From IMG/VR virus record IMGVR_UViG_3300042402_002641, positions 1 to 64,000 of that record: 64,000 nt of DNA, one strand, 5' to 3'. The position numbers were made by a program, and so were the translations under genes. The notes below the pieces were generated by a model. The model was given only the letters and a program-made list of their open reading frames with translations, did no database searches and was not told where the DNA came from. This document shows, in pieces, positions 544 to 27,202 of this stretch. Numbering within the stretch: position 1 is the stretch's first letter; every line of letters starts with the position of its first letter.

Positions 544-2595
544 CTATTTTGTCGAAGCGTGGAAAATTCCATCCCAATCTTCAGGCAATTTCTGTGTCGA
601 TTGGAACTCGCAACGTTCGATCCACATATCATAATAACCACTTAATCTGCCGTCGAACTGATCTCTCAGCTGTTTGCACATGCTGATTGCGGTACTGAAA
701 TTCTGTGATCTATATGCACCATGCATGGCATTGTGTATTTTCTTAGACACATGGTAGTCAGGAGTGACGTCGTCTAAGACTGTATAGATAGCGATACCTA
801 CTGTCTTGCCCTTGACTGCTAGATCGTCTATTTTTAGAAAGAAGAAATCATCACCACACTGGTCTACTGTGGCCCCACCGACTAATAGCACACACCCATA
901 TTCTTTGCATTTGCTTTCAATACGTGCCGCAGTACTGACAGCATCACCTAGGATATCATAGCTGTGCCTTGCAGTAGATCCCATCTCTCCAATGTAGCCT
1001 AGGCCCGTGTTGATACCTGCACCCATAGCAATAGCAGGACGGCCTTCTGCAACAATCTTATCATTAAATTGTTTTACTGCCTTCAACATGTTAAGTCCTG
1101 TACGAACTGCTGTTTTTGGATGGTTAGGATCTTCAATAGGAGCATTGTGTATGTGCATACTGGCATCACCGATATACTTGATGATCATACCATCAGCATC
1201 TAACACAGGTTGTGTAATAGCATCCATATACCCGTTCATGATACGTGTTAGTCCTTTAACGTCGTCACCGAAACTTTCACCTAATGGTGTAAACCCACGT
1301 AGATCACTAAAACATATTGAAACTTCACGCTTCATTCCATCCTTGATGAGTGCAGGATTCTCAGCAAGCATACGTACAACTGTTGGACTGGCATATCCGG
1401 CAAACTGTTTCTTTATGGCCTGTTTCTGTAGAAACTCACTTACAAACTTGACACCGTAGGCATGCAGAGCGACCAAGATTGTGCCAACAAGAATGGCAGT
1501 AGCGTCAAATAAGAATAGAAAATTAGAGAAAGCGTAGTGACTACCAAAGACCACACCAACACATATAATGATAACACTCGCAAGTCCCGCATATACCCAC
1601 CTCGTTAAAAATAACAATAGTATTCCCACTGCTAGAATCGCAATGATTTCTAAACCATCAGCATAGTCGGGACGCTGTATTACCACACCATTTATCATGG
1701 TGCCAATTGCGGCAGCTTGTGCATCTTGTGGAAATACTGCGCCTTTGGCCGTAGGCAATGGATTACTAATACCAGCGGCTGTTGGGCCTACAATAACTAT
1801 AGCACCATTAAAAGTTTTAGGTAAGTTCATTAGACTCACCTGTTGGTTTTCTTGACTCCAATCGATCCATACACGACCTAGGTTGTCTGTAGTAATAGGA
1901 CCAAACTTAGGTATGCGCATTTTCTCAACGCCACCTTCGTTGAGCTTAACCTGGAACGTAGAGTCGCCAGCAGCAACACGAAGTGTTTCCATAGCGATAC
2001 TAGGATACAGTTTACCGTCTACAGACACAATCAACGGCAGTCTACGATTCACGCCGTCAACTTCTGGTAGTGTGCCAACTATTCCAATGCCTGCTGCCGC
2101 ATTTTCTAATTGGGGTATGTTAGCAATCAGTCCCGGATATTGGACGATTTGGTCCTGCCACTCTGGGCCTAGCACTGCTGAACCTGGATTGCGTGGCGTA
2201 TTTTTTGTTCGTTGGCTAGGCACTGATCCTAGCACTACTGGATATTGTTTTAGAGCCGTTGCGAAAACAGCATCACCACCAGTGCGGTCAGGCTCAGCCA
2301 TGATAACATTGAGCACAACAAGGCCAGCACCACGATTATAGAGATCTTTAATAATTTTTGCATACTCTGCCCTCGGTAAAGGCCATTGACCATATTTGTC
2401 TAAGGCTGCTTCATCTATGTTTACTGCGTAGATGTTATTGGCTGTCGGTGCTTTGGCAGTGATTAAGGTATCGAAGTAGCGTAGTCTTACACTTTCTACA
2501 AAGACAGGATCAGCGATTCTTATACTTATAATAAGTGCTAATGTCAGCAGTGCAGTCCACGGACTAGTTAGGATTTTTTTGATTAGTTTTTGCAT
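544..2595 (-). CDS. CHASE2-domain class III adenylate/guanylate cyclase
   Basis: CHASE2 motif IDEAALDKYGQWPLPR, 3 TM helices, cyclase motifs FSDLRGFT, KYIGDA, GINTG, YDILGDAV; start chosen at MQKLIKK behind TAAATA. Confidence 0.93.
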   Translation of the reverse strand: MQKLIKKILTSPWTALLTLALIISIRIADPVFVESVRLRYFDTLITAKAPTANNIYAVNIDEAALDKYGQWPLPRAEYAKIIKDLYNRGAGLVVLNVIMAEPDRTGGDAVFATALKQYPVVLGSVPSQRTKNTPRNPGSAVLGPEWQDQIVQYPGLIANIPQLENAAAGIGIVGTLPEVDGVNRRLPLIVSVDGKLYPSIAMETLRVAAGDSTFQVKLNEGGVEKMRIPKFGPITTDNLGRVWIDWSQENQQVSLMNLPKTFNGAIVIVGPTAAGISNPLPTAKGAVFPQDAQAAAIGTMINGVVIQRPDYADGLEIIAILAVGILLLFLTRWVYAGLASVIIICVGVVFGSHYAFSNFLFLFDATAILVGTILVALHAYGVKFVSEFLQKQAIKKQFAGYASPTVVRMLAENPALIKDGMKREVSICFSDLRGFTPLGESFGDDVKGLTRIMNGYMDAITQPVLDADGMIIKYIGDASMHIHNAPIEDPNHPKTAVRTGLNMLKAVKQFNDKIVAEGRPAIAMGAGINTGLGYIGEMGSTARHSYDILGDAVSTAARIESKCKEYGCVLLVGGATVDQCGDDFFFLKIDDLAVKGKTVGIAIYTVLDDVTPDYHVSKKIHNAMHGAYRSQNFSTAISMCKQLRDQFDGRLSGYYDMWIERCEFQSTQKLPEDWDGIFHASTK

Positions 2596-2736
2596 GACTA
2601 TATTTATTTGAACCATTCGTTTTAGGTTTAGCAAAAATTCTATTAGTCAACTGTCCGTGATTTTTTTTATCTGCTTCTAGTTGTCGATGTAGGTGTCTTT
2701 TAAAATCGTCGTCTGTCATTGAGTTCCTTAGTTAAT

Positions 2737-7469: not shown

Positions 7470-8774
7470 TTATGGCTTAATTGGACTCAACATACTAATT
7501 GGAACGAATCCTTTTTTGCCATCTCGAGTTTGTACCTTAACCCAATTATTATCAACTTCAATTACTTTTACTTCTGTGCCTTTTAAAAACAACCATTGCC
7601 TTGTGCTTGCTTCGATAGCTTTGGCTCTAACATAATACGGCTCTTTAAAAAATTTCACGTCACCAACTTTGACTTCTTCTTTTGGTGTTACTGTTGGTAC
7701 TGCTGCTGGCGCTGGTGGAACAACTGTTGTAATAGGTTTGACATCATTTTTAGGTTCCTCCTTCTTTACTTCTGGCTTGATTTCTGGCTTGATTTCTGGC
7801 TTGATTTCAGGTTTGACTTCTGGTGCGGGCTCGTTAGCTTTGCCTGTTCCATTGCCTTGTCCGCCATTGGACTGCTGTGGTGCGGGGTTAGGTGCACTTT
7901 TGGTGGGGGCGGATTCTTTGGGGGTTTGTGTTTGAACCAACTCATTCTTTTCCTCCTTGAAACTCCAATGTCCTTTACGGGCACCTTCATTAATAGTCTG
8001 GACCACTGCTGCCTGCACAGCTACGTCCACTGCTCGGTTGATACTTTCGTTAATGCTGCCGCCAATCTCACCTTCCACGGCATTGGCATTGGCTCCTAGT
8101 GTGGTGCCATCGCCCACGAAACGCAGCAAGGTCAATTTGTCCATGTAGCTCAACACAGTTTTGGTCACGGTCACAGTTGTGAGTATTTCACCAGTGGCCA
8201 CACTAACTGTTCTTAGAGTCACTGTCACTGTGTCGCTTTGATATTGTGTTGATGCACCAATACCAAAAATTCTCACACCCGAACCACCTGTGAGTGTATT
8301 CGAATCGTAGCCAACAATACCACCTTCCATAATGATACCAGCAAACATCATTGGCGGTAGCGATTTGGCATCCTTACCTTGATACTGTTCACGCATCTGA
8401 CGAATCATCTGTCGTTCTTTGATCAGATTGTCCAGTCCCCCACGTTCTAATACAGTGAACCAACGTTGATCACCTACGTCTTGCAGAGCTTTGATTAGAT
8501 AGTTTTCAGCGCCCTGTGTCACAGCTGAACTCAAACTAGCAATCAAGGGCTGGCTTTTACGTTGTCCTGTTAGATCACGGAACCCATAAACAGCCACAGC
8601 CACTGGCCCGCCTTGTGGTGGTCGTAGTTTGTTTTGTTCTTGCTTTAGAAACTTACTGGCTTCGACTCGAGGTGCATCAAATTGATTGCTGGTTATTTTT
8701 TCACGTACGGCTGAACTTGATGCGCAACCAGATAATACTGCCACTACTGCTAGAGATATCAATGTGTGTTTCAT
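7470..8774 (-). CDS. csgG: curli secretion channel CsgG with Pro-rich linker and C-terminal SH3-like domain
   Basis: Lipobox LSGC; VAVYGFRDLTGQRK, STAVTQG-like SSAVTQGA, FTVLERGGLDNLIKERQMIR; C-terminal WVKVQTRDGKKGFVP. Confidence 0.92.
   Translation of the reverse strand: MKHTLISLAVVAVLSGCASSSAVREKITSNQFDAPRVEASKFLKQEQNKLRPPQGGPVAVAVYGFRDLTGQRKSQPLIASLSSAVTQGAENYLIKALQDVGDQRWFTVLERGGLDNLIKERQMIRQMREQYQGKDAKSLPPMMFAGIIMEGGIVGYDSNTLTGGSGVRIFGIGASTQYQSDTVTVTLRTVSVATGEILTTVTVTKTVLSYMDKLTLLRFVGDGTTLGANANAVEGEIGGSINESINRAVDVAVQAAVVQTINEGARKGHWSFKEEKNELVQTQTPKESAPTKSAPNPAPQQSNGGQGNGTGKANEPAPEVKPEIKPEIKPEIKPEVKKEEPKNDVKPITTVVPPAPAAVPTVTPKEEVKVGDVKFFKEPYYVRAKAIEASTRQWLFLKGTEVKVIEVDNNWVKVQTRDGKKGFVPISMLSPIKP
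7770..7823 (-). repeat. 12-bp tandem repeat encoding (KPEI/V)n in the CsgG linker
   Basis: ttctggcttgat units on the plus strand; protein EVKPEIKPEIKPEIKPEVK. Confidence 0.85.
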
Positions 8775-10453: not shown

Positions 10454-11137
10454 TTAGCGGATTTCTGGAAACAGGCATTCCTGGATAAAATGCTGAACAT
10501 CATCCTCACTTAACCCTAAACTTACCATCACCCGTGGTGTATGCGGGTTACATTTTTGATTTTGTGCGTAGTAGTTCTGTGCTTCTGTGGTATTTTCAGC
10601 GGTATTATTAGTTTCCGCTACTGTGCTTAGATAGTGTTCTATGGTAGTTCGAGCTAGATCTGTGATCTGTTCTAATTCTTCTTCATCACTGACATTGCCC
10701 GCAGCTACCATGCTGCCACTGAATATATTAGTAGCCCATTCAGGTAATGCACGTTGTTTGCGCCATTCCAGTTTGGCCACTTCATCTGCAAACCATTGCA
10801 TCATAGGATGGTCAGCATCGCCTGCTTTTGAGTAATCGTGGAAACAGCCTGTGATCTTATTCTTGCCGGCAATAACATCAAAGCCGTAAATTGGAGCAGG
10901 ATTGTGCGTATGCGGGAAGATACAACAGTGCATCATCCACAAGCCTTTAGTTTCTCTAGCGTCTACTACATCAACGTGAGCACGACGATACCGATCACTA
11001 GTCCACACACGATTAACCCAGCCAGGCTGATTAAATCTTTCCATTCCAGGCTCATCAATCTCTTGACCCGTACGGCTGAAGTTATCTTCCAGTAGATGTT
11101 GGATCTCAATTAGTGTGTCCCAAACCTTACTCTCCAC
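10454..11137 (-). CDS. pcyX: ferredoxin-dependent bilin reductase, PcyX-type (PcyA family)
   Basis: RRAHVD..WMMHCCIFP..PIYGFD..NPHT; Asp56 at the PcyA Glu76 position, His70 and Asp87 retained; downstream of heme oxygenase. Confidence 0.85.
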   Translation of the reverse strand: MESKVWDTLIEIQHLLEDNFSRTGQEIDEPGMERFNQPGWVNRVWTSDRYRRAHVDVVDARETKGLWMMHCCIFPHTHNPAPIYGFDVIAGKNKITGCFHDYSKAGDADHPMMQWFADEVAKLEWRKQRALPEWATNIFSGSMVAAGNVSDEEELEQITDLARTTIEHYLSTVAETNNTAENTTEAQNYYAQNQKCNPHTPRVMVSLGLSEDDVQHFIQECLFPEIR

Positions 11138-11672
11138 GATATAGGTCCCGCATCATCTTAATAGCATATTCAAATGCTAAACGAGCTTCGTCTCCTAAAT
11201 CGTCAGTGAGCAATTCTCTGATAGCCATCTTCATAGAATCTGCGTTTTCGAACTCGTAGAACTTGCCGCTTGAAATATGTGCTACCTGTTTCTTAATGAT
11301 TTGACCACCGAACAAGTCGCCCATATGACGGCAGTATAAATGCGCCTTAATAAGATGTTTGCGTTCTTGATCATTGCCTAACCTGTGTAAGTATGCTTGG
11401 TATTCTAGTGTAGCAGGAGTTAGATAGTAGTATTCACATTCATCTAATTCTGTGAAGTCTGCATAGATGGCCTTAAGTCTTGGTAGATCATGCATGTTAG
11501 CAAAAAATCCTTGACGCTTGCTATACCATTCAATTGGATCATATATGGCCAAAAGATTATAGAGATAGTTTCTGTAGTCTTGTTTTTCAATCTTGCCGCT
11601 GAGTAATATCTTGGCAAACTTTGTTGTTTCTGCTTCGTGATGCAGATCTTTGGTAATTTCTCTCAGGCTCAT
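11127..11672 (-). CDS. hemO: heme oxygenase
   Basis: LREITKDLHHEAE proximal His; AHLYCRHMGDLFGGQII distal helix. Confidence 0.92.
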   Translation of the reverse strand: MSLREITKDLHHEAETTKFAKILLSGKIEKQDYRNYLYNLLAIYDPIEWYSKRQGFFANMHDLPRLKAIYADFTELDECEYYYLTPATLEYQAYLHRLGNDQERKHLIKAHLYCRHMGDLFGGQIIKKQVAHISSGKFYEFENADSMKMAIRELLTDDLGDEARLAFEYAIKMMRDLYRGE

Positions 11673-11968
11673 TCCTGCTCCACTGAGATTCGCAATGGCG
11701 AACCATTCTGTCTTGCTATTGTTGTGGCTTCGATGCCTTTTTGCTCTGCTATCTCAAAAGGATATATGCCTACTATAGAACTACCGGTTTCGTGTATCTC
11801 TAGAGTGATTTCTTTGGCTTTGGATTCTGTGTGTTTAAAAATACCTGTGAGTAGTTCTATGACTAGTTCCATAGGAGTTTTATCGTCATTGAGAAATATC
11901 ACCTTCCACAACCTCGGGGGAGCTAACTGAACTGTGGTTTTTTCTTTGACTTCAATTTCTGTAGACAT
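11669..11968 (-). CDS. clpS: Clp protease adaptor ClpS
   Basis: WKVIFLNDDKTPMELV..IHETG..YPFEIAEQK. Confidence 0.93.
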   Translation of the reverse strand: MSTEIEVKEKTTVQLAPPRLWKVIFLNDDKTPMELVIELLTGIFKHTESKAKEITLEIHETGSSIVGIYPFEIAEQKGIEATTIARQNGSPLRISVEQE

Positions 11969-11999
11969 TTACGATCCTGGGTTTATTGATGTATTTAAC

Positions 12000-12020
12000 A
12001 AGAGAGGTTTCCCTCTCTTG
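12000..12020 (-). terminator. hairpin after hsp20
   Basis: aagagagg-tttc-cctctctt inverted repeat. Confidence 0.55.
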
Positions 12021-12027
12021 TAGTATA

Positions 12028-12462
12028 CTACTTTACATCAACAATGTCAATGACCTTAGGCTTGGCTGATTCTGGAATGTTACGAATCAACTTCACGGTT
12101 AGCATGCCATTCTTGGTTTCCGCACCTACCACCTCGATGTGTTCTGCCAGAGGAAATTCTTTGACAAAATCACGAGTTGCGAGACCGCGATGCATGTACT
12201 GATCTGCTGCATAGTCTGTTGTTTGGCTTTCCCCTTTAACAACAAGAACGTTGCTTTCAACTGTTACTGAAATCTCGGTCTTATCAAAACCAGTCACAGC
12301 TAGTTGAATCGCATATTCGTTTTCGTCTAATTTTATTATATTATGTGGAGGATAGTTATTTGATACACTGTTGGCAAATCTGCGTTCCATTTGATCAAAC
12401 ATCGTGTCAAATCCCACAAGTGCTCTGTTTAGAGCATCTATTCTAGCTAATTGATTGTTCAT
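12028..12462 (-). CDS. small heat shock protein Hsp20 (IbpA-like)
   Basis: NYPPHNI..LAVTGF..HRGLATRDF..NGMLTVKL. Confidence 0.95.
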   Translation of the reverse strand: MNNQLARIDALNRALVGFDTMFDQMERRFANSVSNNYPPHNIIKLDENEYAIQLAVTGFDKTEISVTVESNVLVVKGESQTTDYAADQYMHRGLATRDFVKEFPLAEHIEVVGAETKNGMLTVKLIRNIPESAKPKVIDIVDVK

Positions 12463-12466
12463 AGTA

Positions 12467-12487
12467 GTCTCCTTTTAAAGTAAGAAC
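12467..12487 (-). promoter_or_regulatory. ROSE-like SD-sequestering hairpin (hsp20)
   Basis: GUUCUUACUUUAAAAGGAGAC; UCUU-A-CU pairs with AG-GAGA. Confidence 0.55.
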
Positions 12488-12519
12488 AATAAGGGCCTCG
12501 AAAGTACCCTTGTTTATGA

Positions 12520-14424
12520 TTAGTCTGCTTTCTTCTCTGTGAAGGTAGCATCAACTACATCATCTTGGTCGGGCATAGGTCCTGCTTCAGCTTGTGCTGT
12601 TGCCTGATCTTTAGCCTGCTTTTTTTCCAGCAATGTTTTCATTGCCGGGAAAACTTTATTAAGCTCTTCGGTGATCTTTTCAGTGTCATCGCCTTTGGCT
12701 GCTGTTTCAACTGCAGTGATCACTGTTTCAATTTCTGTGATTTCTGCTTCTGTGAGCTCTGCACGGAATTCTTCAAGATCTTTTTTAACTTCATGTACCT
12801 GCGCCTCTGCTGAATTTCTTGCATCAATCAATTCACGTGCTTTTTTATCTGCTTCTGCATTTAATTCGGCATCTTTGATCATGTCTTGAATTTCAGCTTC
12901 TGTTAGTCCGCTGTTAGATTTAATAGTGATCTTGTTTTCTTTGCCTGTGGCTTTGTCTTTGGCAGAGATATGCATGATACCGTTGGCATCAATGTCAAAG
13001 GTAACTTCAACCTGTGGCTGTCCTCTACGTGCAGGTGCAATGCCGTCAAGTTTGAATTCGCCCAATAGCTTGTTATATTGCACAAGCTCACGTTCCCCTT
13101 GGAATACTTTGATATCTACTGCGGGTTGATTGTCTTCTGCTGTGGAGAATGTCTGCTGTCCCTTGGTTGGGATAGTTGTATTCTTTTGAATGATCTTTGA
13201 CATCACGCCACCCATGGTTTCAATGCCCAAGGAGAGTGGAGTGACGTCTAACAACAGCACGTCATTACGATCGCCACCTAGCACAGCACCTTGAATAGCA
13301 GCACCAACTGCAACGGCTTCGTCTGGGTTGACATCTTTACGTGGTGCTTTACCAAACAGTTTTTCAACTTCTTCTTGCACCTTAGGCATGCGTGTTTGAC
13401 CACCAACAAGGATAACCTCGTCGATATCTGAGGCACTTACGCCTGCATCTTTGAGAGCAATACGGCATGGCTCTAATGAGCGTGTAATCAGTTCGGCAAC
13501 TAGTTGTTCTAGTTTGCTACGACTTAATTTTATCGCCAGATGTTTTGGACCGCTGGCATCTGCTGTGACATACGGAAGATTGACGTCTGTCTGAGCTGAG
13601 CTTGATAATTCAATCTTGGCTTTTTCAGCAGCATCTTTCAAACGTTGCAGAGCCAACATGTCTTTGCTGAGATCCACTCCTTGATCTTTCTTGAACTCAT
13701 CTACCAAGAAATCCATGATGCGTTGGTCAAAGTCTTCACCACCCAAGAATGTGTCACCGTTGGTGCTTAGTACTTCGATCTGCTTGTCGCCGTCAACGTT
13801 GGCTATCTCGATGATCGAAACATCGAATGTACCGCCACCAAGGTCGTAAACAGCAATTTTCCTATCTTTCTTATCAGCTTTATCAACACCATAAGCAAGA
13901 GCTGCCGCAGTAGGCTCGTTAATAATACGGAGTACCTCCAAGCCTGCGATCTGTCCAGCATCCTTAGTAGCTTGTCTTTGGCTGTCGTTAAAGTACGCAG
14001 GCACTGTAATAACTGCTTGTGTAACTGTTGTACCAAGATAATCCTCCGCGGTCTGTTTCATTTTGCGCAGAACTTCTGCTGAAATCTGCGGTGGTGCTAA
14101 TTCTTTACCCTGTGCTCTAACCCACGCATCACCATTAGAATTTTCATAGATCTCGTAGGGCATTAGATCGAGATCTTTTTGCACTGCCTGTTCTTTGAAC
14201 TTGCGACCAATCAATCGCTTGCTGGCATAGATTGTGTTTTTGGGATTTGTTACTGCCTGACGCTTGGCTGAAGCGCCAACGATGATTTCATCTTGTGTGT
14301 AGGCCACGATTGAGGGTGTAGTTCTTGCACCTTCTGAATTTTCAATAACTTTGGATTTTCCATTCTCGATAACAGCCACGCATGAGTTGGTGGTGCCGAG
14401 GTCAATACCGATGATCTTAGACAT
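12520..14424 (-). CDS. dnaK: chaperone DnaK (Hsp70)
   Basis: [27 protein letters not shown]; full length 634 aa. Confidence 0.98.
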
Positions 14425-23676: not shown

Positions 23677-24648
23677 TTATTTCTCTATTTTGATGTTTTT
23701 AGCTATAGGTGCAAAGGCTGTACGCAATTCTTCGGCGTAGGCCATGACACCACGTGGGTTAAGTTCATCTCGATCTATAATTATATAGTTCTGTTCTGCC
23801 CAGTCTTGATATTCTTTGCTTAGTATTGCTTTACTGAACTTGTCCACATACCAGTCCACAATGGTGTTTGGGGTTTGTGGTGGTAATACAACTATCCAGC
23901 CAGCATAAACTTTGAGTCCTGGAATTATATCGCTGAGCAATGGTACATTTGGTAATGCTTTTAGTTTGGGACCACCAGTGAGACCAATGGGCTTGACTTT
24001 GCCAGCTTCGATCAAGGGTTTGGCAATGGCAACGGGCATGATGCCAAATTCTGTGCCGGATTTGCCATCATAACTGGCCACACTAATCACAGCCGGCAAT
24101 GGGCCATTGAAGGCCACGCTTTGTATCTGCCGAGGATCTGCCTTGGTGCGGTGTATGATGTATTCATAGGCCATTCTATGTGCGCCGCCACCTACAGCAA
24201 TGTTAATAGGACTCCCATTGGTGATATATTTCACAAACTCTTGTGGTGTGTTAACTGAGCTTTTACTAGATGCTACTAATACCAAGGGACTTTTACCCAA
24301 AGTCACAGCAGGCTTGAAGCTGTTGTATTCAAATTTCTTTGCGTCTCGCTGCCAGATATCATTGGTTACAAATAGACTCATATGACTGGGCACCAGGAGA
24401 TGCAAGCCATCGCTGGGCGCTGTCATGAAACCATTGCTGGCTATAGTAGCATCAGCACCAGGTCGTGTTTCCACAATGAACGTGATGCCAGGATTTTGTC
24501 GTGCAACTATATCGCTGGCCTTGCGGAAGCTGATTTCATTACCACTTCCAGAAGCAAATCCAATGGTGGTGGTTATGGACTTGTTAGGTGTCCATTGTGC
24601 CCAGGCCAAGGTGGGCATAATCAATAAGGCCAGCAATAATTTTTTCAT
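23677..24648 (-). CDS. Bug/TctC tripartite tricarboxylate transporter substrate-binding protein
   Basis: Signal peptide; IVETRPGADATIA, APSDG, GKVKPIG, LPNVP. Confidence 0.85.
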   Translation of the reverse strand: MKKLLLALLIMPTLAWAQWTPNKSITTTIGFASGSGNEISFRKASDIVARQNPGITFIVETRPGADATIASNGFMTAPSDGLHLLVPSHMSLFVTNDIWQRDAKKFEYNSFKPAVTLGKSPLVLVASSKSSVNTPQEFVKYITNGSPINIAVGGGAHRMAYEYIIHRTKADPRQIQSVAFNGPLPAVISVASYDGKSGTEFGIMPVAIAKPLIEAGKVKPIGLTGGPKLKALPNVPLLSDIIPGLKVYAGWIVVLPPQTPNTIVDWYVDKFSKAILSKEYQDWAEQNYIIIDRDELNPRGVMAYAEELRTAFAPIAKNIKIEK

Positions 24649-26538: not shown

Positions 26539-26588
26539 AATATTTCCTTTAAACTTATAATATATAGCTAAAAATTTTAGGTAATCAT

Positions 26589-26617
26589 AAAAAAAGACTA
26601 CCGAAGTAGTCTTTTTT
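26589..26617 (-). terminator. terminator of the cspA-tmRNA transcript
   Basis: aaaaaagactac-cgaa-gtagtctttttt (UUCG loop on minus strand). Confidence 0.85.
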
Positions 26618-26998
26618 GGTTGTTTTGTTTACAAGGTATTTCCTACCCCGGACCTGCTGTTTTTTAGGCAGCTAGAGCAAATCTGCTTTCATTAGCAGCA
26701 CCGCGAACGGTGTTACCAGTGAAGCTCATTGCGCTAAAGTCGAATGTATCTGCGTTTGCATTTACGAGTTTTGCTTGATTTACGGTCATCGCCTACCGTG
26801 TTGCCGTCTCTATTATCTCACCCTGTCGAAACCATGGCAGGCCCATCATAAAAGGACTAGAGCAAATACTACAGTAACAATAATAAAGCCAACTAATGTG
26901 CTATATTCGTTATCCATACTAATCTCCTTATGGTGGACCTGGCGGGAGTCGAACCCGCGTCCAGAATGCCTTCACTTTGAAGGGATTACAACAATTTC
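26618..26998 (-). ncRNA. ssrA: tmRNA, circularly permuted two-piece form: acceptor piece ~26998-26931, coding piece 26844-~26618
   Basis: T-arm GCGGG-TTCGACT-CCCGC and CAGGTCC-A-CCA lie upstream of 5' GGGCCTG..TTCGAC; 7-bp acceptor stem with G3:U70; tag ORF 26759-26664 ends FALAA*. Confidence 0.92.
26846..26917 (-). CDS. 23-aa hydrophobic peptide inside the tmRNA intervening segment
   Basis: TAAGGAG RBS 6 nt upstream; MDNEYSTLVGFIIVTVVFALVLL*. Confidence 0.65.
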   Translation of the reverse strand: MDNEYSTLVGFIIVTVVFALVLL

Positions 26999-27202
26999 TT
27001 AGGCGGGCTGAATATTACTAGCCTGCTGTCCTTTCTGACCCTGAGTTACTTCAAACCTTACACTCTGTCCTTCTTGTAGGCTCTTGAAGCCACTCGAATT
27101 AATCTGTGAAAAGTGAGCAAATAAGTCTGCGCCACCATCGTCCGGAGTAATGAATCCAAAACCTTTGGCGTCGTTAAACCATTTTACTTTTCCTGTTACC
27201 AT
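26999..27202 (-). CDS. cspA: cold shock protein
   Basis: [19 protein letters not shown]. Confidence 0.96.

What the first reader, a model, noticed from the sequence alone, without database searches (positions are those of the whole stretch)
26664..26759. Unusually long, apparently tandem proteolysis tag
Seen: after UAAAU the resume codon gives ANADTFDFSAMSFTGNTVRGAANESRFALAA (31 aa, versus ~10 in most proteobacteria), with a tag-like start (ANADTF) and a complete internal AANESRFALAA. Inference: two adaptor-binding sites or altered protease routing, alongside the phage ClpS.
Basis: partly seen in the sequence, partly recalled or inferred. Interest (0 to 1): 0.6.

Follow-up and report, generated by a model that had tools for sequence, protein, structure and literature searches.

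The report
Phage tmRNA with long two-part tag
A giant phage carries its own split ribosome-rescue RNA (tmRNA) whose degradation tag is three times the usual length; the extra part is really translated, is conserved in a whole clade of related phages, and those phages also carry their own ClpA, ClpP and ClpS protease genes.

Summary
Window 26573-27023 (minus strand) is a circularly permuted, two-piece tmRNA gene in a 280-kb virus record. Its reading frame (26759-26664) encodes 31 residues, starting from the canonical resume codon.

The long tag is not a one-off. In IMG/VR contigs I found 99 loci (54 distinct peptides, 22-31 aa) built the same way:
- an N-terminal module A[NKT]A[DNS]TF[DEK][FY];
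- a variable middle;
- usually a complete canonical (A)N[DE]xxF[AE]LAA end.

Several results show the whole frame is translated:
- The frame stays open across about 10 length classes.
- dN/dS is about 0.19 in the tag frame, against more than 2 in the other two frames.
- The resume codon sits about 85 nt from the coding-piece 5' end in both long- and short-tag relatives.

Internal resumption is therefore very unlikely. A covarying long-range helix (codon 7 with the bases 3' of helix 5) loops out the extra codons.

This tmRNA sequence type is almost absent from 185,579 bacterial species genomes. Long-tag phages, but none of 12 short-tag phages, carry ClpS, ClpA, a true ClpP and DnaK.

The function of the N-terminal module (second degron or altered routing) remains an inference. 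Verdict: a new variant of a known kind, of moderate to high interest.

The parts
26931..26993 (-). Acceptor piece of the two-piece tmRNA: 3' strands of helix 2, T-arm, acceptor 3' strand CAGGUCC (26941-26935), discriminator A and encoded CCA (26933-26931)
   Evidence: Rfam RF04321 alignment starts at 26993. Sequence read. The acceptor stem pairs with GGGCCUG and has G3:U70, as in 88 of 90 relatives.
26845..26930 (-). Intervening segment (86 nt) between the CCA end and the 5' end of the coding piece; presumably removed on maturation
   Evidence: Insert in the acceptor-stem loop of both Rfam models. Its length varies from 28 to 200 nt among relatives, and it always ends in ..TGAT.
26846..26917 (-). 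Small ORF inside the intervening segment: 23-aa hydrophobic peptide (MDNEYSTLVGFIIVTVVFALVLL). The Shine-Dalgarno UAAGGAG directly follows the CCA, and the stop TGA lies 1 nt before the coding piece
   Evidence: A conserved family of 10 distinct peptides in relatives has dN/dS 0.33 in frame against 0.63 and 1.79.
26760..26844 (-). 5' part of the coding piece: acceptor 5' strand GGGCCUG (26844-26838), helix-2 5' strands, a hairpin in place of pseudoknot 1, and the resume context ..CGUAAAU
   Evidence: Rfam alignments. It is 85 nt long in 28 of 32 long-tag and 37 of 58 short-tag relatives.
26664..26759 (-). Tag reading frame: 31 codons plus TAA. N-module ANADTFDFSA is 26759-26730, middle MSFTGNTVRG is 26729-26700, canonical-like AANESRFALAA is 26699-26667, and the stop is 26666-26664
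   Evidence: Purifying selection in this frame only. Family alignment.
26737..26741 (-). 5' strand of a long-range helix (GACUU, codon 7 plus 2 nt), pairing with 26655-26651
   Evidence: RNAalifold. The count of structure pairs at col 39/134 gives CG 20, GC 15, GU 11, AU 3. A register-free test finds 33 of 38 distinct combinations with at least 4 bp, exceeded by 0 of 5000 shuffles.
26651..26655 (-). 3' strand of the long-range helix (AGGUC), immediately 3' of helix 5
26656..26672 (-). Helix 5: GCUG (26672-26669) pairs with CAGC (26659-26656), with the stop codon in the loop
   Evidence: 100% paired in 52 distinct sequences; the middle pair is AU 24, UA 24, GC 3. A stop codon in the helix-5 loop is the tmRNA norm (PMC1168896).
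26632..26650 (-). Tail hairpin (7 bp) after the long-range helix; its loop may form a small pseudoknot with downstream bases in many relatives
   Evidence: 97.5% paired with compensatory changes. The pseudoknot was seen by eye only.
26583..26617 (-). Intrinsic terminator ending the tmRNA transcript
   Evidence: The stem scores on both strands at 26590-26617. The run of T on the minus strand is visible. A hairpin plus T-run is present in all long-tag relatives.
26999..27202 (-). Cold-shock protein gene ending 5 nt upstream of the tmRNA; syntenic in several relatives
   Evidence: Pfam CSD, 106 bits. The same gene lies upstream in L039, L070 and L103.
11669..11968 (-). Phage ClpS (99 aa)
   Evidence: Pfam ClpS, 90.9 bits; NCBIfam ClpS models. 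Predicted to dock on the phage ClpA N-domain: score 0.90 against a best control of 0.00.
12028..14424 (-). Hsp20 (12028-12462) and DnaK (12520-14424), next to ClpS
   Evidence: Pfam HSP20, 64 bits; HSP70, 852 bits.

Best explanation
This is a functional, phage-encoded, two-piece (circularly permuted) tmRNA.

Inferred from homology: it is transcribed as one precursor with or after the cold-shock gene. It is cut into an acceptor piece ending in CCA and a coding piece, charged with Ala (G3:U70), and brought to stalled ribosomes by the host's SmpB and EF-Tu.

Shown by comparison: translation resumes at the canonical GCA (26759) and runs through all 31 codons. The extra codons are an insertion inside an extended helix 5. 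A covarying 4-5 bp helix between codon 7 and the bases just 3' of helix 5 loops them out, which would keep the resume codon and the stop-codon hairpin close together, as in 10-codon tmRNAs.

The product is a two-part tag. The C-terminal (A)ANESRFALAA is an ordinary proteobacterial ssrA-type Clp degron. It is preceded by a conserved, aromatic, strand-like module (ANADTFDF...FTGNTV).

Inferred: tagged fragments are fed to Clp proteases, and the added module tunes recognition or engagement. It would act as a second recognition site or an extended handle for the ClpA-ClpP-ClpS set (and perhaps DnaK/J) that this phage clade itself encodes.
For: tmRNA identity: (12 long-tag relatives all pass both Rfam models). 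G3:U70 and an encoded CCA.

Resume site: Rfam alignment and a constant spacing of about 85 nt.

Full-length translation: 66 of 67 tmRNAs found with a pattern covering only the resume context and codons 1-6 keep the frame open to an x[LIV]AA-type end over 22-31 codons. Tag lengths are bimodal (10-14 or 22-31, none of 15-21). Variable sites fall 13:7:22 by codon position. dN/dS is 0.19 (codons 1-18) and 0.18 (codons 9-18), against 2.0-2.5 out of frame.

RNA architecture.

Phage-only lineage: the helix-2 sequence type is in 71 of 90 viral loci but in only 2 contigs among 185,579 species genomes. Both are MAG contigs, one with a long tag and one with a 10-aa tag.

Clp link, among 14 records with a confirmed long tag: ClpS in 11, ClpA-like in 5, ClpP at 200 bits or more in 6. 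The only complete genome (G001, 383 kb) has all three. All three counts are 0 of 12 in short-tag phage records, 7 of which are at least 90% complete. DnaK is in 6 of 7 long-tag against 0 of 7 short-tag records.

The window's own genome has a ClpA (TIGR02639, 884 bits, full length, IGF loop) next to a DnaJ. The ClpS/ClpA-N model scores 0.90 against a best control of 0.00; that mark is reached by 51 of 78 solved complexes and 2 of 108 mismatched pairs. The three runs agree in at least 87% of their contacts and the partner's pLDDT is at least 85.
Against: No ClpP was found in this particular record, which is only 79% complete.

The Clp and DnaK co-occurrence is confounded by shared ancestry, because all long-tag phages appear to be one clade of about 380-kb phages.

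Part of the conservation near codon 7 is RNA-level rather than peptide-level. The internal 'complete tag' is not universal; sister variants end in GKSKVALAA or GLVAA.

Nothing here shows that any protease or adaptor reads the N-terminal module. The ClpS-ClpA pass may simply reflect the solved E. coli complex. The host, and hence the host's own tag, was not identified.
Confidence: 0.6

Rival explanations
1. The extension is a tolerated spacer, a relic of an in-frame tandem duplication or insertion in the tag frame. Only the C-terminal canonical module acts as a degron. The N-module is constrained merely to stay harmless, soluble and translatable, and to keep the RNA helix.
For: The layout is 10 + spacer + 10, and both halves share A-N-x-x-x-F. 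No tags of 15-21 aa were seen, which suggests a jump in length rather than gradual growth. The middle segment varies a lot in length and sequence. Codon 7 is under RNA constraint. mRNA-like-domain cassettes recombine between tmRNA backbones.
Against: dN/dS of about 0.18 holds in codons 9-18, outside the RNA helix, and FTGN is invariant despite synonymous changes. The motif TF[DEK][FY] is kept across 54 distinct peptides. A pure spacer would be expected to drift or be lost, yet only 1 of 67 has a broken frame.
Confidence: 0.25
2. The N-module gives tagged fragments a different fate from plain degradation. Examples are capture by the phage DnaK/DnaJ/Hsp20 chaperones, sequestration through strand-strand association, or protection from host ClpXP/SspB so that only the phage machinery handles them.
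For: The module has an alternating aromatic/polar, strand-like pattern (reading of the sequence). DnaK, DnaJ and Hsp20 are encoded by the same phages.
Against: The extreme C-terminus stays a canonical LAA-type Clp degron in nearly all variants. There is no evidence of binding to any chaperone. This is inference only.
Confidence: 0.1
3. Translation resumes at the internal GCU GCU AAU, giving a normal 11-residue tag. The upstream 20 codons are untranslated RNA.
For: The internal sequence would make a perfect canonical tag.
Against: The internal site lacks the conserved UAAAU context and the spacing of about 85 nt. The upstream codons show frame-specific purifying selection and in-frame indels only. 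Many relatives have no internal GCN-AAY at that place.
Confidence: 0.03
4. The gene is an inactive or decoy tmRNA that only titrates host SmpB, like the TLD-only tmRNA-like RNA of mycobacteriophage DS6A, so the tag frame is irrelevant.
For: No phage SmpB was found. A decoy precedent exists (PMC4131195).
Against: A complete mRNA-like domain is conserved and under coding selection. Helix 5 holds the stop in its loop, and covariation runs throughout.
Confidence: 0.02

Closest known systems
Betaproteobacterial-type two-piece (circularly permuted) tmRNA (Rfam RF01850 and RF04321; Sharkady & Williams 2004, as cited in PMC9004378)
   Same: Same gene order (acceptor piece, intervening segment, coding piece), T-arm, G3:U70 acceptor stem, a hairpin in place of pseudoknot 1, the UAAAU-GCA resume context, an ANDxxFALAA-like C-terminus, and the stop in the helix-5 loop. 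It passes both gathering scores.
   Different: The frame has 31 codons instead of about 10, from an insertion of about 54 nt. There is an extra covarying helix from codon 7 to the bases 3' of helix 5. The tail is reduced to one hairpin plus a terminator. The AT-rich helix-2 sequence type occurs on viral contigs and almost never in bacterial genomes.
Phage-encoded tmRNAs, including two-piece ones in aquatic phages (Melnitz and pelagimyophages, PMC9004378; huge phages, PMC7162821; mycobacteriophages and Bacillus phage G, PMC4131195)
   Same: A tmRNA carried by large lytic phages of aquatic bacteria, with no SmpB of its own here, and placed among translation and stress genes.
   Different: Melnitz's tmRNA is alpha-type and sits under a glutamine riboswitch. 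None of these papers reports extended two-part tags or a link to phage Clp genes. No isolate phage in the phages collection matched beyond the T-arm.
E. coli ssrA tag AANDENYALAA, with its overlapping SspB, ClpX and ClpA determinants (from my own knowledge of Flynn et al. 2001 and related work; not re-read here)
   Same: The last 11 residues, AANESRFALAA, keep the pattern AAN-acidic-x-x-aromatic-ALAA.
   Different: About 20 further conserved residues precede it. Whether they bind anything is unknown.
Long ssrA tags of Mycoplasma/Mesoplasma (about 27 aa) read by Lon (from my own knowledge of Gur & Sauer 2008; related work PMC8403727 was listed but not read)
   Same: They are the precedent that a long tag with several determinants can redirect tagged proteins to a different AAA+ protease.
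   Different: There is no sequence similarity. Those tags lost the LAA-type ClpX end in organisms lacking ClpXP, whereas here the Clp-type end is kept. No Lon gene was found in the phages.
Jumbo-phage ClpA and ClpS genes (Pseudomonas phage PA5oct group, Sinorhizobium phage Phosso; ClpS noted in jumbo phages, PMC6102473 and PMC7824862, listed)
   Same: The phage ClpA is 42-44% identical to those of isolates. It has an IGF loop and two AAA+ modules.
   Different: Here ClpA, ClpS and ClpP travel together with a tmRNA whose tag is extended. I did not check whether those isolates carry a tmRNA.

Membership tests
tmRNA, permuted/two-piece form (RF04321, RF01850) | Covariance-model score above the curated gathering threshold | tested here: met
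   143.7 bits (cut-off 47) and 135.7 bits (cut-off 84), both full-length. 12 long-tag relatives also pass.
tmRNA, permuted/two-piece form (RF04321, RF01850) | tRNA-like domain: 7-bp acceptor stem with G3:U70, T-arm, discriminator A and CCA | tested here: met
   GGGCCUG pairs with CAGGUCC, followed by ACCA. G3:U70 is present in 88 of 90 relatives.
tmRNA, permuted/two-piece form (RF04321, RF01850) | Permuted gene order: the acceptor (3') piece lies upstream of the coding (5') piece | tested here: met
   ARAGORN 'tmRNA*' call; Rfam permuted model matched over positions 1-213.
tmRNA, permuted/two-piece form (RF04321, RF01850) | Tag frame starting at a conserved resume codon and ending with a stop in the helix-5 loop | tested here: met
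   Helix 5 is 100% paired with compensatory changes.
tmRNA, permuted/two-piece form (RF04321, RF01850) | Maturation into two base-paired RNA pieces; SmpB-dependent tagging | not testable with these tools
No SmpB was found in the phage records, so the host's must be used.
ssrA-type Clp degron | C-terminal hydrophobic ..ALAA-COOH preceded by an (A)AN[DE]xx[FY] motif | tested here: met
   AANESRFALAA at the C-terminus. Most relatives keep N[DE]xxF[AE][LI]AA.
ssrA-type Clp degron | Degradation of tagged proteins by ClpXP or ClpAP, with enhancement by SspB | not testable with these tools
   This is a biochemical property. No SspB gene was found in 7 long-tag phage records.
Tandem (duplicated) tag | Two units with significant similarity to each other at the DNA or peptide level | tested here: inconclusive
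   Both halves share the positions A1, N2, F6 and A10, in a 10 + spacer + 10 layout. A1 and N2 are constrained anyway at a resume site. No statistical test of unit similarity was made. Some relatives lack the second unit's ANDxxF.
Lon-directed long tags (Mycoplasma type) | Loss of the ClpX-type LAA end; Lon as the cognate protease | tested here: not met
   The LAA end is kept. No Lon_C match in 5 long-tag records.
ClpA (ClpP-docking double-ring unfoldase), for the phage protein at G000:272582-274936 | Clp_N domain, two AAA+ modules, IG[FL] loop, no ClpB middle domain | tested here: met
   TIGR02639 at 884 bits in one stretch over positions 2-733 of 734 (below the 993-bit equivalog cut-off), whereas ClpB models match in two stretches. 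Pfam domains. Walker motifs and IGF at 620-622.
ClpS adaptor | ClpS fold and family score; docking on the ClpA N-domain | tested here: met
   Pfam 90.9 bits against a cut-off of 23. The complex model scores 0.90 against a best control of 0.00; this shows likeness, not proof of binding.

The most novel reading that the evidence does not exclude
The clade runs a semi-orthogonal quality-control pathway. The phage tmRNA marks stalled products in infected cells with a tag whose conserved N-terminal module is read specifically by the phage's own ClpA-ClpP (gated by phage ClpS), or escapes ClpS inhibition of it. This would separate phage-directed turnover from the host's ClpXP/SspB route. In addition, the tmRNA precursor would double as an mRNA, since its excised spacer encodes a conserved 23-aa membrane peptide.
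Probability: 0.2. Interest if true: 0.8.

Novelty: new variant of a known kind. Interest (0 to 1): 0.6.

Why it matters
Why phages carry tmRNAs is an open question. The proposals are keeping ribosomes free, recycling host protein and sensing host state.

Here a whole clade of roughly 380-kb freshwater phages has remodelled the part of tmRNA that decides the fate of the tagged protein. The same phages carry the matching protease hardware (ClpA, ClpP, ClpS) and chaperones.

That turns a vague idea, that phages rewire host proteolysis through trans-translation, into a defined and testable system:
- one RNA;
- a two-module peptide with natural variants (31-, 28- and 23-aa forms, with or without the internal canonical motif);
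- three phage proteins.

It also gives natural examples of how a tmRNA fold accommodates a threefold longer frame, through a covarying helix that loops the insert out. The two-module tags could also become tunable degradation tags, but only if the N-terminal module proves to change which protease reads the tag.

Tried and rejected
- **Host identification.** The single genome-contig scan, run with the phage-type helix-2 pattern, returned only two MAG contigs that look like phage DNA. A class-level Rfam search around one of them was uninformative: 1 of 151 genomes was above cut-off, and that was the MAG itself.
- **Tree of the conserved tmRNA core (about 150 nt).** It was unresolved, with long and short tags interleaved. 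Comparison of L095 with L025 shows that mRNA-like-domain cassettes recombine onto different 5' halves, so I draw no conclusion about monophyly of long tags from the RNA tree.
- **False pattern hits.** The matches in L136 (G012) and L152 (G016) lie in protein genes, not tmRNAs. I excluded both records from the co-occurrence counts.
- **ARAGORN resume-codon calls.** It sometimes picks a resume codon two codons upstream (VNAN...) or downstream (L123). I corrected these by alignment.
- **Pseudoknot in the tail hairpin loop.** It is convincing by eye for the GUUAU/AUAGC-type variants but not for the window's own GGAAAU variant. I do not claim it.
- **Model of the tag with a partner.** I did not model the tag against ClpS, DnaK or SspB. 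I have no specific binding claim, and the ClpA pore cannot be modelled within the size limit.
- **Not found.** Lon, SspB and SmpB in the long-tag phage records searched; ClpP in this record.
Full report
**What is there**

The window is the first 64 kb of a 280,019-bp IMG/VR virus record that CheckV estimates at 79% complete. Rfam agrees with two full-length matches. They are tmRNA_permuted RF04321 (143.7 bits, cut-off 47, 26993-26664) and beta_tmRNA RF01850 (135.7 bits, cut-off 84, 27050-26692).

Reading the minus strand gives the gene layout:
- A cold-shock gene ends at 26999 (Pfam CSD).
- The acceptor piece runs 26993-26931, with the T-arm, CAGGUCC and ACCA.
- An 86-nt intervening segment follows.
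- The coding piece starts with GGGCCUG at 26844. This pairs with the acceptor 3' strand and gives G3:U70.
- 85 nt later the sequence CGUAAAU precedes GCA at 26759.
- The frame then runs 31 codons to TAA at 26666-26664.
- A small hairpin and a strong intrinsic terminator (26617-26583) close the gene.

The finding's coordinates and peptide are therefore exact. Because the charged Ala is added first, the appended peptide would be 32 residues.

**Is the long frame real or an accident?**

Both Rfam alignments put GCA 26759 on the consensus resume codon with high posterior probability. They treat about 54 nt inside the frame as insertion relative to the model.

To get relatives I scanned IMG/VR for a pattern in helix 2 of the coding piece. 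This gave 120 loci and 105 permuted tmRNAs. Their tag lengths are bimodal: 10 aa in 53, 12-14 aa in 19, 23-31 aa in 33, and none of 15-22. Two of the long ones were called as 33 aa from a resume codon two codons upstream.

A second scan used only the resume context plus codons 1-6 of the long form, and so did not depend on what follows. It gave 67 further permuted tmRNAs. Of these, 66 keep the frame open for 22-31 codons and end in a hydrophobic-Ala-Ala type C-terminus. One is truncated.

Together there are 99 long-tag loci, 67 distinct DNA sequences, 54 distinct peptides and about ten length classes. All length changes are in frame. The distance from the coding-piece 5' end to the resume codon is 85 nt in 28 of 32 long-tag genes, and 84-85 nt in 51 of 58 short-tag genes. 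The same resume site is therefore used in both.

In the window's own subfamily (41 distinct DNA sequences), variable sites in codons 1-18 fall 13:7:22 over codon positions 1, 2 and 3. Counting changes along a minimum spanning tree gives dN/dS of 0.19 in the tag frame, against 2.0 and 2.5 in the other two frames. For codons 9-18 alone the values are 0.18 against 2.3 and 2.3. The FTGN motif is invariant although each of its codons has synonymous variants.

The stretch upstream of the internal GCU-GCU-AAU is therefore translated and selected as peptide.

**Architecture of the tag**

The aligned peptides show three parts:
1. An N-module, A-[NKT]-A-[DNS]-T-F-[DEK]-[FY]-x-x.
2. A variable middle of about 3-11 residues. 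It is often hydrophobic/polar alternating, and in the window's subfamily it is MSFTGNTV.
3. A C-module that in most lineages is a complete canonical tag, (A)N[DE]xxF[AE][LI]AA. In some it is reduced to GKSKVALAA or GLVAA.

The window's 31-codon form is the longest common variant. Its 28-codon sisters differ by a 9-nt indel plus substitutions in the C-module.

The N-module has the A-N-x-x-x-F skeleton of a canonical tag, and in L038 the tag reads ANDNAF...ANDSKFALAA. The absence of intermediate lengths also fits. But the similarity rests on three or four positions, two of which are constrained at any resume site. I rate a duplication origin as plausible, not shown.

**RNA structure**

On 52 distinct long-tag sequences (alignment A2; counts) I tested three helices:
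- **Helix 5.** GCNG pairs with CNGC, with the stop in the loop. It is paired in 100% of cells, and the middle pair is AU 24, UA 24, GC 3.
- **Tail hairpin.** It is paired in 97.5% of cells, with compensatory changes.
- **A helix I had not expected.** RNAalifold pairs codon 7 and the next base or two (window 26741-26737) with the bases immediately 3' of helix 5 (26655-26651). At its central pair the counts are CG 20, GC 15, GU 11, AU 3.

Some lineages use a register shifted by one base. In a register-free test, 33 of 38 distinct 5'/3' combinations form at least 4 contiguous pairs. Cognate pairs score a mean of 4.32 against 3.53 for shuffled partners, and 0 of 5000 shuffles reach the observed value. 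The pair types include GACU/GGUC, GAGU/ACUC, GAAG/CUUC, CAAG/CUUG, CGAG/CUCG, GACG/CGUC and GUUC/GAAC.

So residue 7 (D, E or K) changes together with its RNA partner. Codons 8 to about 28 sit as a large loop inside an extended helix 5. My inference is that this keeps the resume codon near the stop-codon hairpin, preserving the geometry of a 10-codon tmRNA.

**A phage-only lineage**

The AT-rich helix-2 sequence type is present in 71 of 90 analysed viral loci. It was found in only 2 contigs among one genome each of 185,579 prokaryote species. Both are short MAG contigs. One carries a long tag and an amber-suppressor-like tRNA, as some viral loci do, and the other a 10-aa tag.

No isolate phage in the 50,697-record collection matches beyond the T-arm. 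The papers I could search describe phage tmRNAs, including 53 two-piece ones that are mostly aquatic. They do not mention extended tags.

mRNA-like-domain cassettes recombine. L095 and L028 (10-aa tag) share the acceptor piece, spacer ORF and helix 2 with long-tag L025, but differ from the next hairpin onward. This explains why a tree of the conserved core does not separate long from short tags.

**Context: proteostasis genes**

The window encodes ClpS (11669-11968), Hsp20 and DnaK side by side.

Elsewhere in the same record (272.6-275.8 kb) lie a ClpA and a DnaJ. The ClpA has these features:
- 784 aa;
- TIGR02639 at 884 bits in a single full-length stretch, below that model's 993-bit equivalog cut-off;
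- a Clp_N domain and two Walker A/B pairs;
- an IGF loop at 620-622.

A model of phage ClpS with the phage ClpA N-domain scores 0.90, and the best control scores 0.00. That mark is reached by 51 of 78 solved complexes and 2 of 108 mismatched pairs. The three runs agree in at least 87% of contacts, and partner pLDDT is at least 85. Since the E. coli complex is solved, this shows likeness, not proof of binding.

I then compared 14 virus records with a confirmed long tag against 12 records with 10-13-aa tags, 7 of which are at least 90% complete:

| Gene | Long-tag records | Short-tag records |
|---|---|---|
| ClpS | 11 of 14 | 0 of 12 |
| ClpA-like (over 170 bits) | 5 of 14 | 0 of 12 |
| ClpP at 200 bits or more | 6 of 14 | 0 of 12 (at most 106 bits, a weaker ClpP-family match) |
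| DnaK | 6 of 7 | 0 of 7 |

The one complete long-tag genome (G001, 383 kb) has all three Clp genes. In the long-tag records searched I did not find SmpB, SspB or Lon.

The caveat is important. Most long-tag records are fragments (16-79% complete). All appear to belong to one clade of phages of about 380 kb, so the association may be inheritance rather than functional coupling.

**Mechanism, with what is shown and what is inferred**

- **Shown by sequence comparison:** a bona fide permuted tmRNA; the canonical resume site; the whole 31-codon frame under peptide-level selection; the stop in the helix-5 loop; a covarying helix that loops out the insert; restriction of this RNA type to phages; and co-occurrence with phage ClpS, ClpA, ClpP, DnaK, DnaJ and Hsp20.
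- **Inferred from established tmRNA biology:** processing into two pieces, charging by AlaRS, delivery by host SmpB and EF-Tu, and degradation through the C-terminal LAA-type degron.
- **Inferred, weakly:** the N-module is a second recognition or engagement element tuned to the phage's ClpAP(S) system. The main rival is that it is a selected but functionally passive spacer left by a duplication.

**Novelty and verdict**

The following are all known: tmRNAs in phages, two-piece tmRNAs, long tags in Mycoplasma and plastids, and ClpA and ClpS in jumbo phages.

As far as the searched literature goes, the following are new:
- a phage-specific tmRNA lineage with conserved two-module tags of 22-31 codons;
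- the RNA solution that accommodates them;
- their coupling to a phage-encoded Clp set.

I file it as a new variant of a known kind, interest 0.6.

A separate by-product may be more unusual. The spacer of the permuted gene carries a conserved small ORF for a hydrophobic peptide of about 23 aa. Its Shine-Dalgarno sequence abuts the CCA end, and its stop lies 1 nt before the coding piece.

Noticed in passing
window 26846-26917 (-); also L016, L025, L028, L053, L069, L095, L123, L131, L139, L153 (intervening segments): The spacer between the two tmRNA pieces holds a small ORF for a hydrophobic peptide of about 23 aa (family M[DN]D..L..G.[IV]VV.VVFALVLL). The Shine-Dalgarno UAAGGAG directly follows the CCA end, and the stop TGA lies in the conserved ..TGAT before the coding piece. 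25 of 96 distinct spacers hold an ATG ORF of at least 15 aa. The family has dN/dS 0.33 in frame against 0.63 and 1.79. A second family (MIMN...WC.VYGLLY) is in L038, L061 and L182. In L039 and L103 a similar hydrophobic ORF sits between the csp gene and the tmRNA instead. A protein-coding tmRNA spacer is not something I know to be described.
   Followed up: partly
window 11127-14424 (-) and G000:272582-275800 (L222): The phage has a proteostasis set. Heme oxygenase, ClpS, Hsp20 and DnaK lie in a row in the window. ClpA and DnaJ lie together near the other end of the record.
   Followed up: yes
L031 4617-4690, L074 2853-2926, L123 2944-3018: ARAGORN calls a tRNA with anticodon CUA (labelled Pyl, that is, an amber-suppressor-like tRNA) near the tmRNA in several related contigs. 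Some ClpP-family matches in related records contain single in-frame TAA or TAG codons. This may hint at stop-codon recoding in part of this phage group. I saw no sign of it in the window.
   Followed up: no
window 7470-8774 (-) and 544-2634 (-): The window encodes a CsgG-like curli secretion channel fused to SH3 domains, and a CHASE2-adenylate/guanylate cyclase. CsgG genes were also reported in pelagimyophages and Melnitz, which likewise carry two-piece tmRNAs (PMC9004378).
   Followed up: no
window 23677-24648 (-): There is a TctC/Bug-family periplasmic receptor gene (Pfam, 47.9 bits). From my own knowledge, this family is greatly expanded in Burkholderiales. That would be a weak hint of a betaproteobacterial host, consistent with the beta-type tmRNA.
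   Followed up: no
L095/L028 versus L025: The tmRNA genes are mosaics. Nearly identical acceptor piece, spacer ORF and helix 2 are joined to different mRNA-like domains and tails (10-aa tag against 28-aa tag). This implies recombination within the gene.
   Followed up: partly
L007 and L033 intervening segments: In some relatives the spacer has no ORF but holds two direct repeats of about 18 nt (UAAAUUUACUUUGGUAUU). In others it forms a long hairpin, and the CCA is only partly encoded (ACC then U).
   Followed up: no
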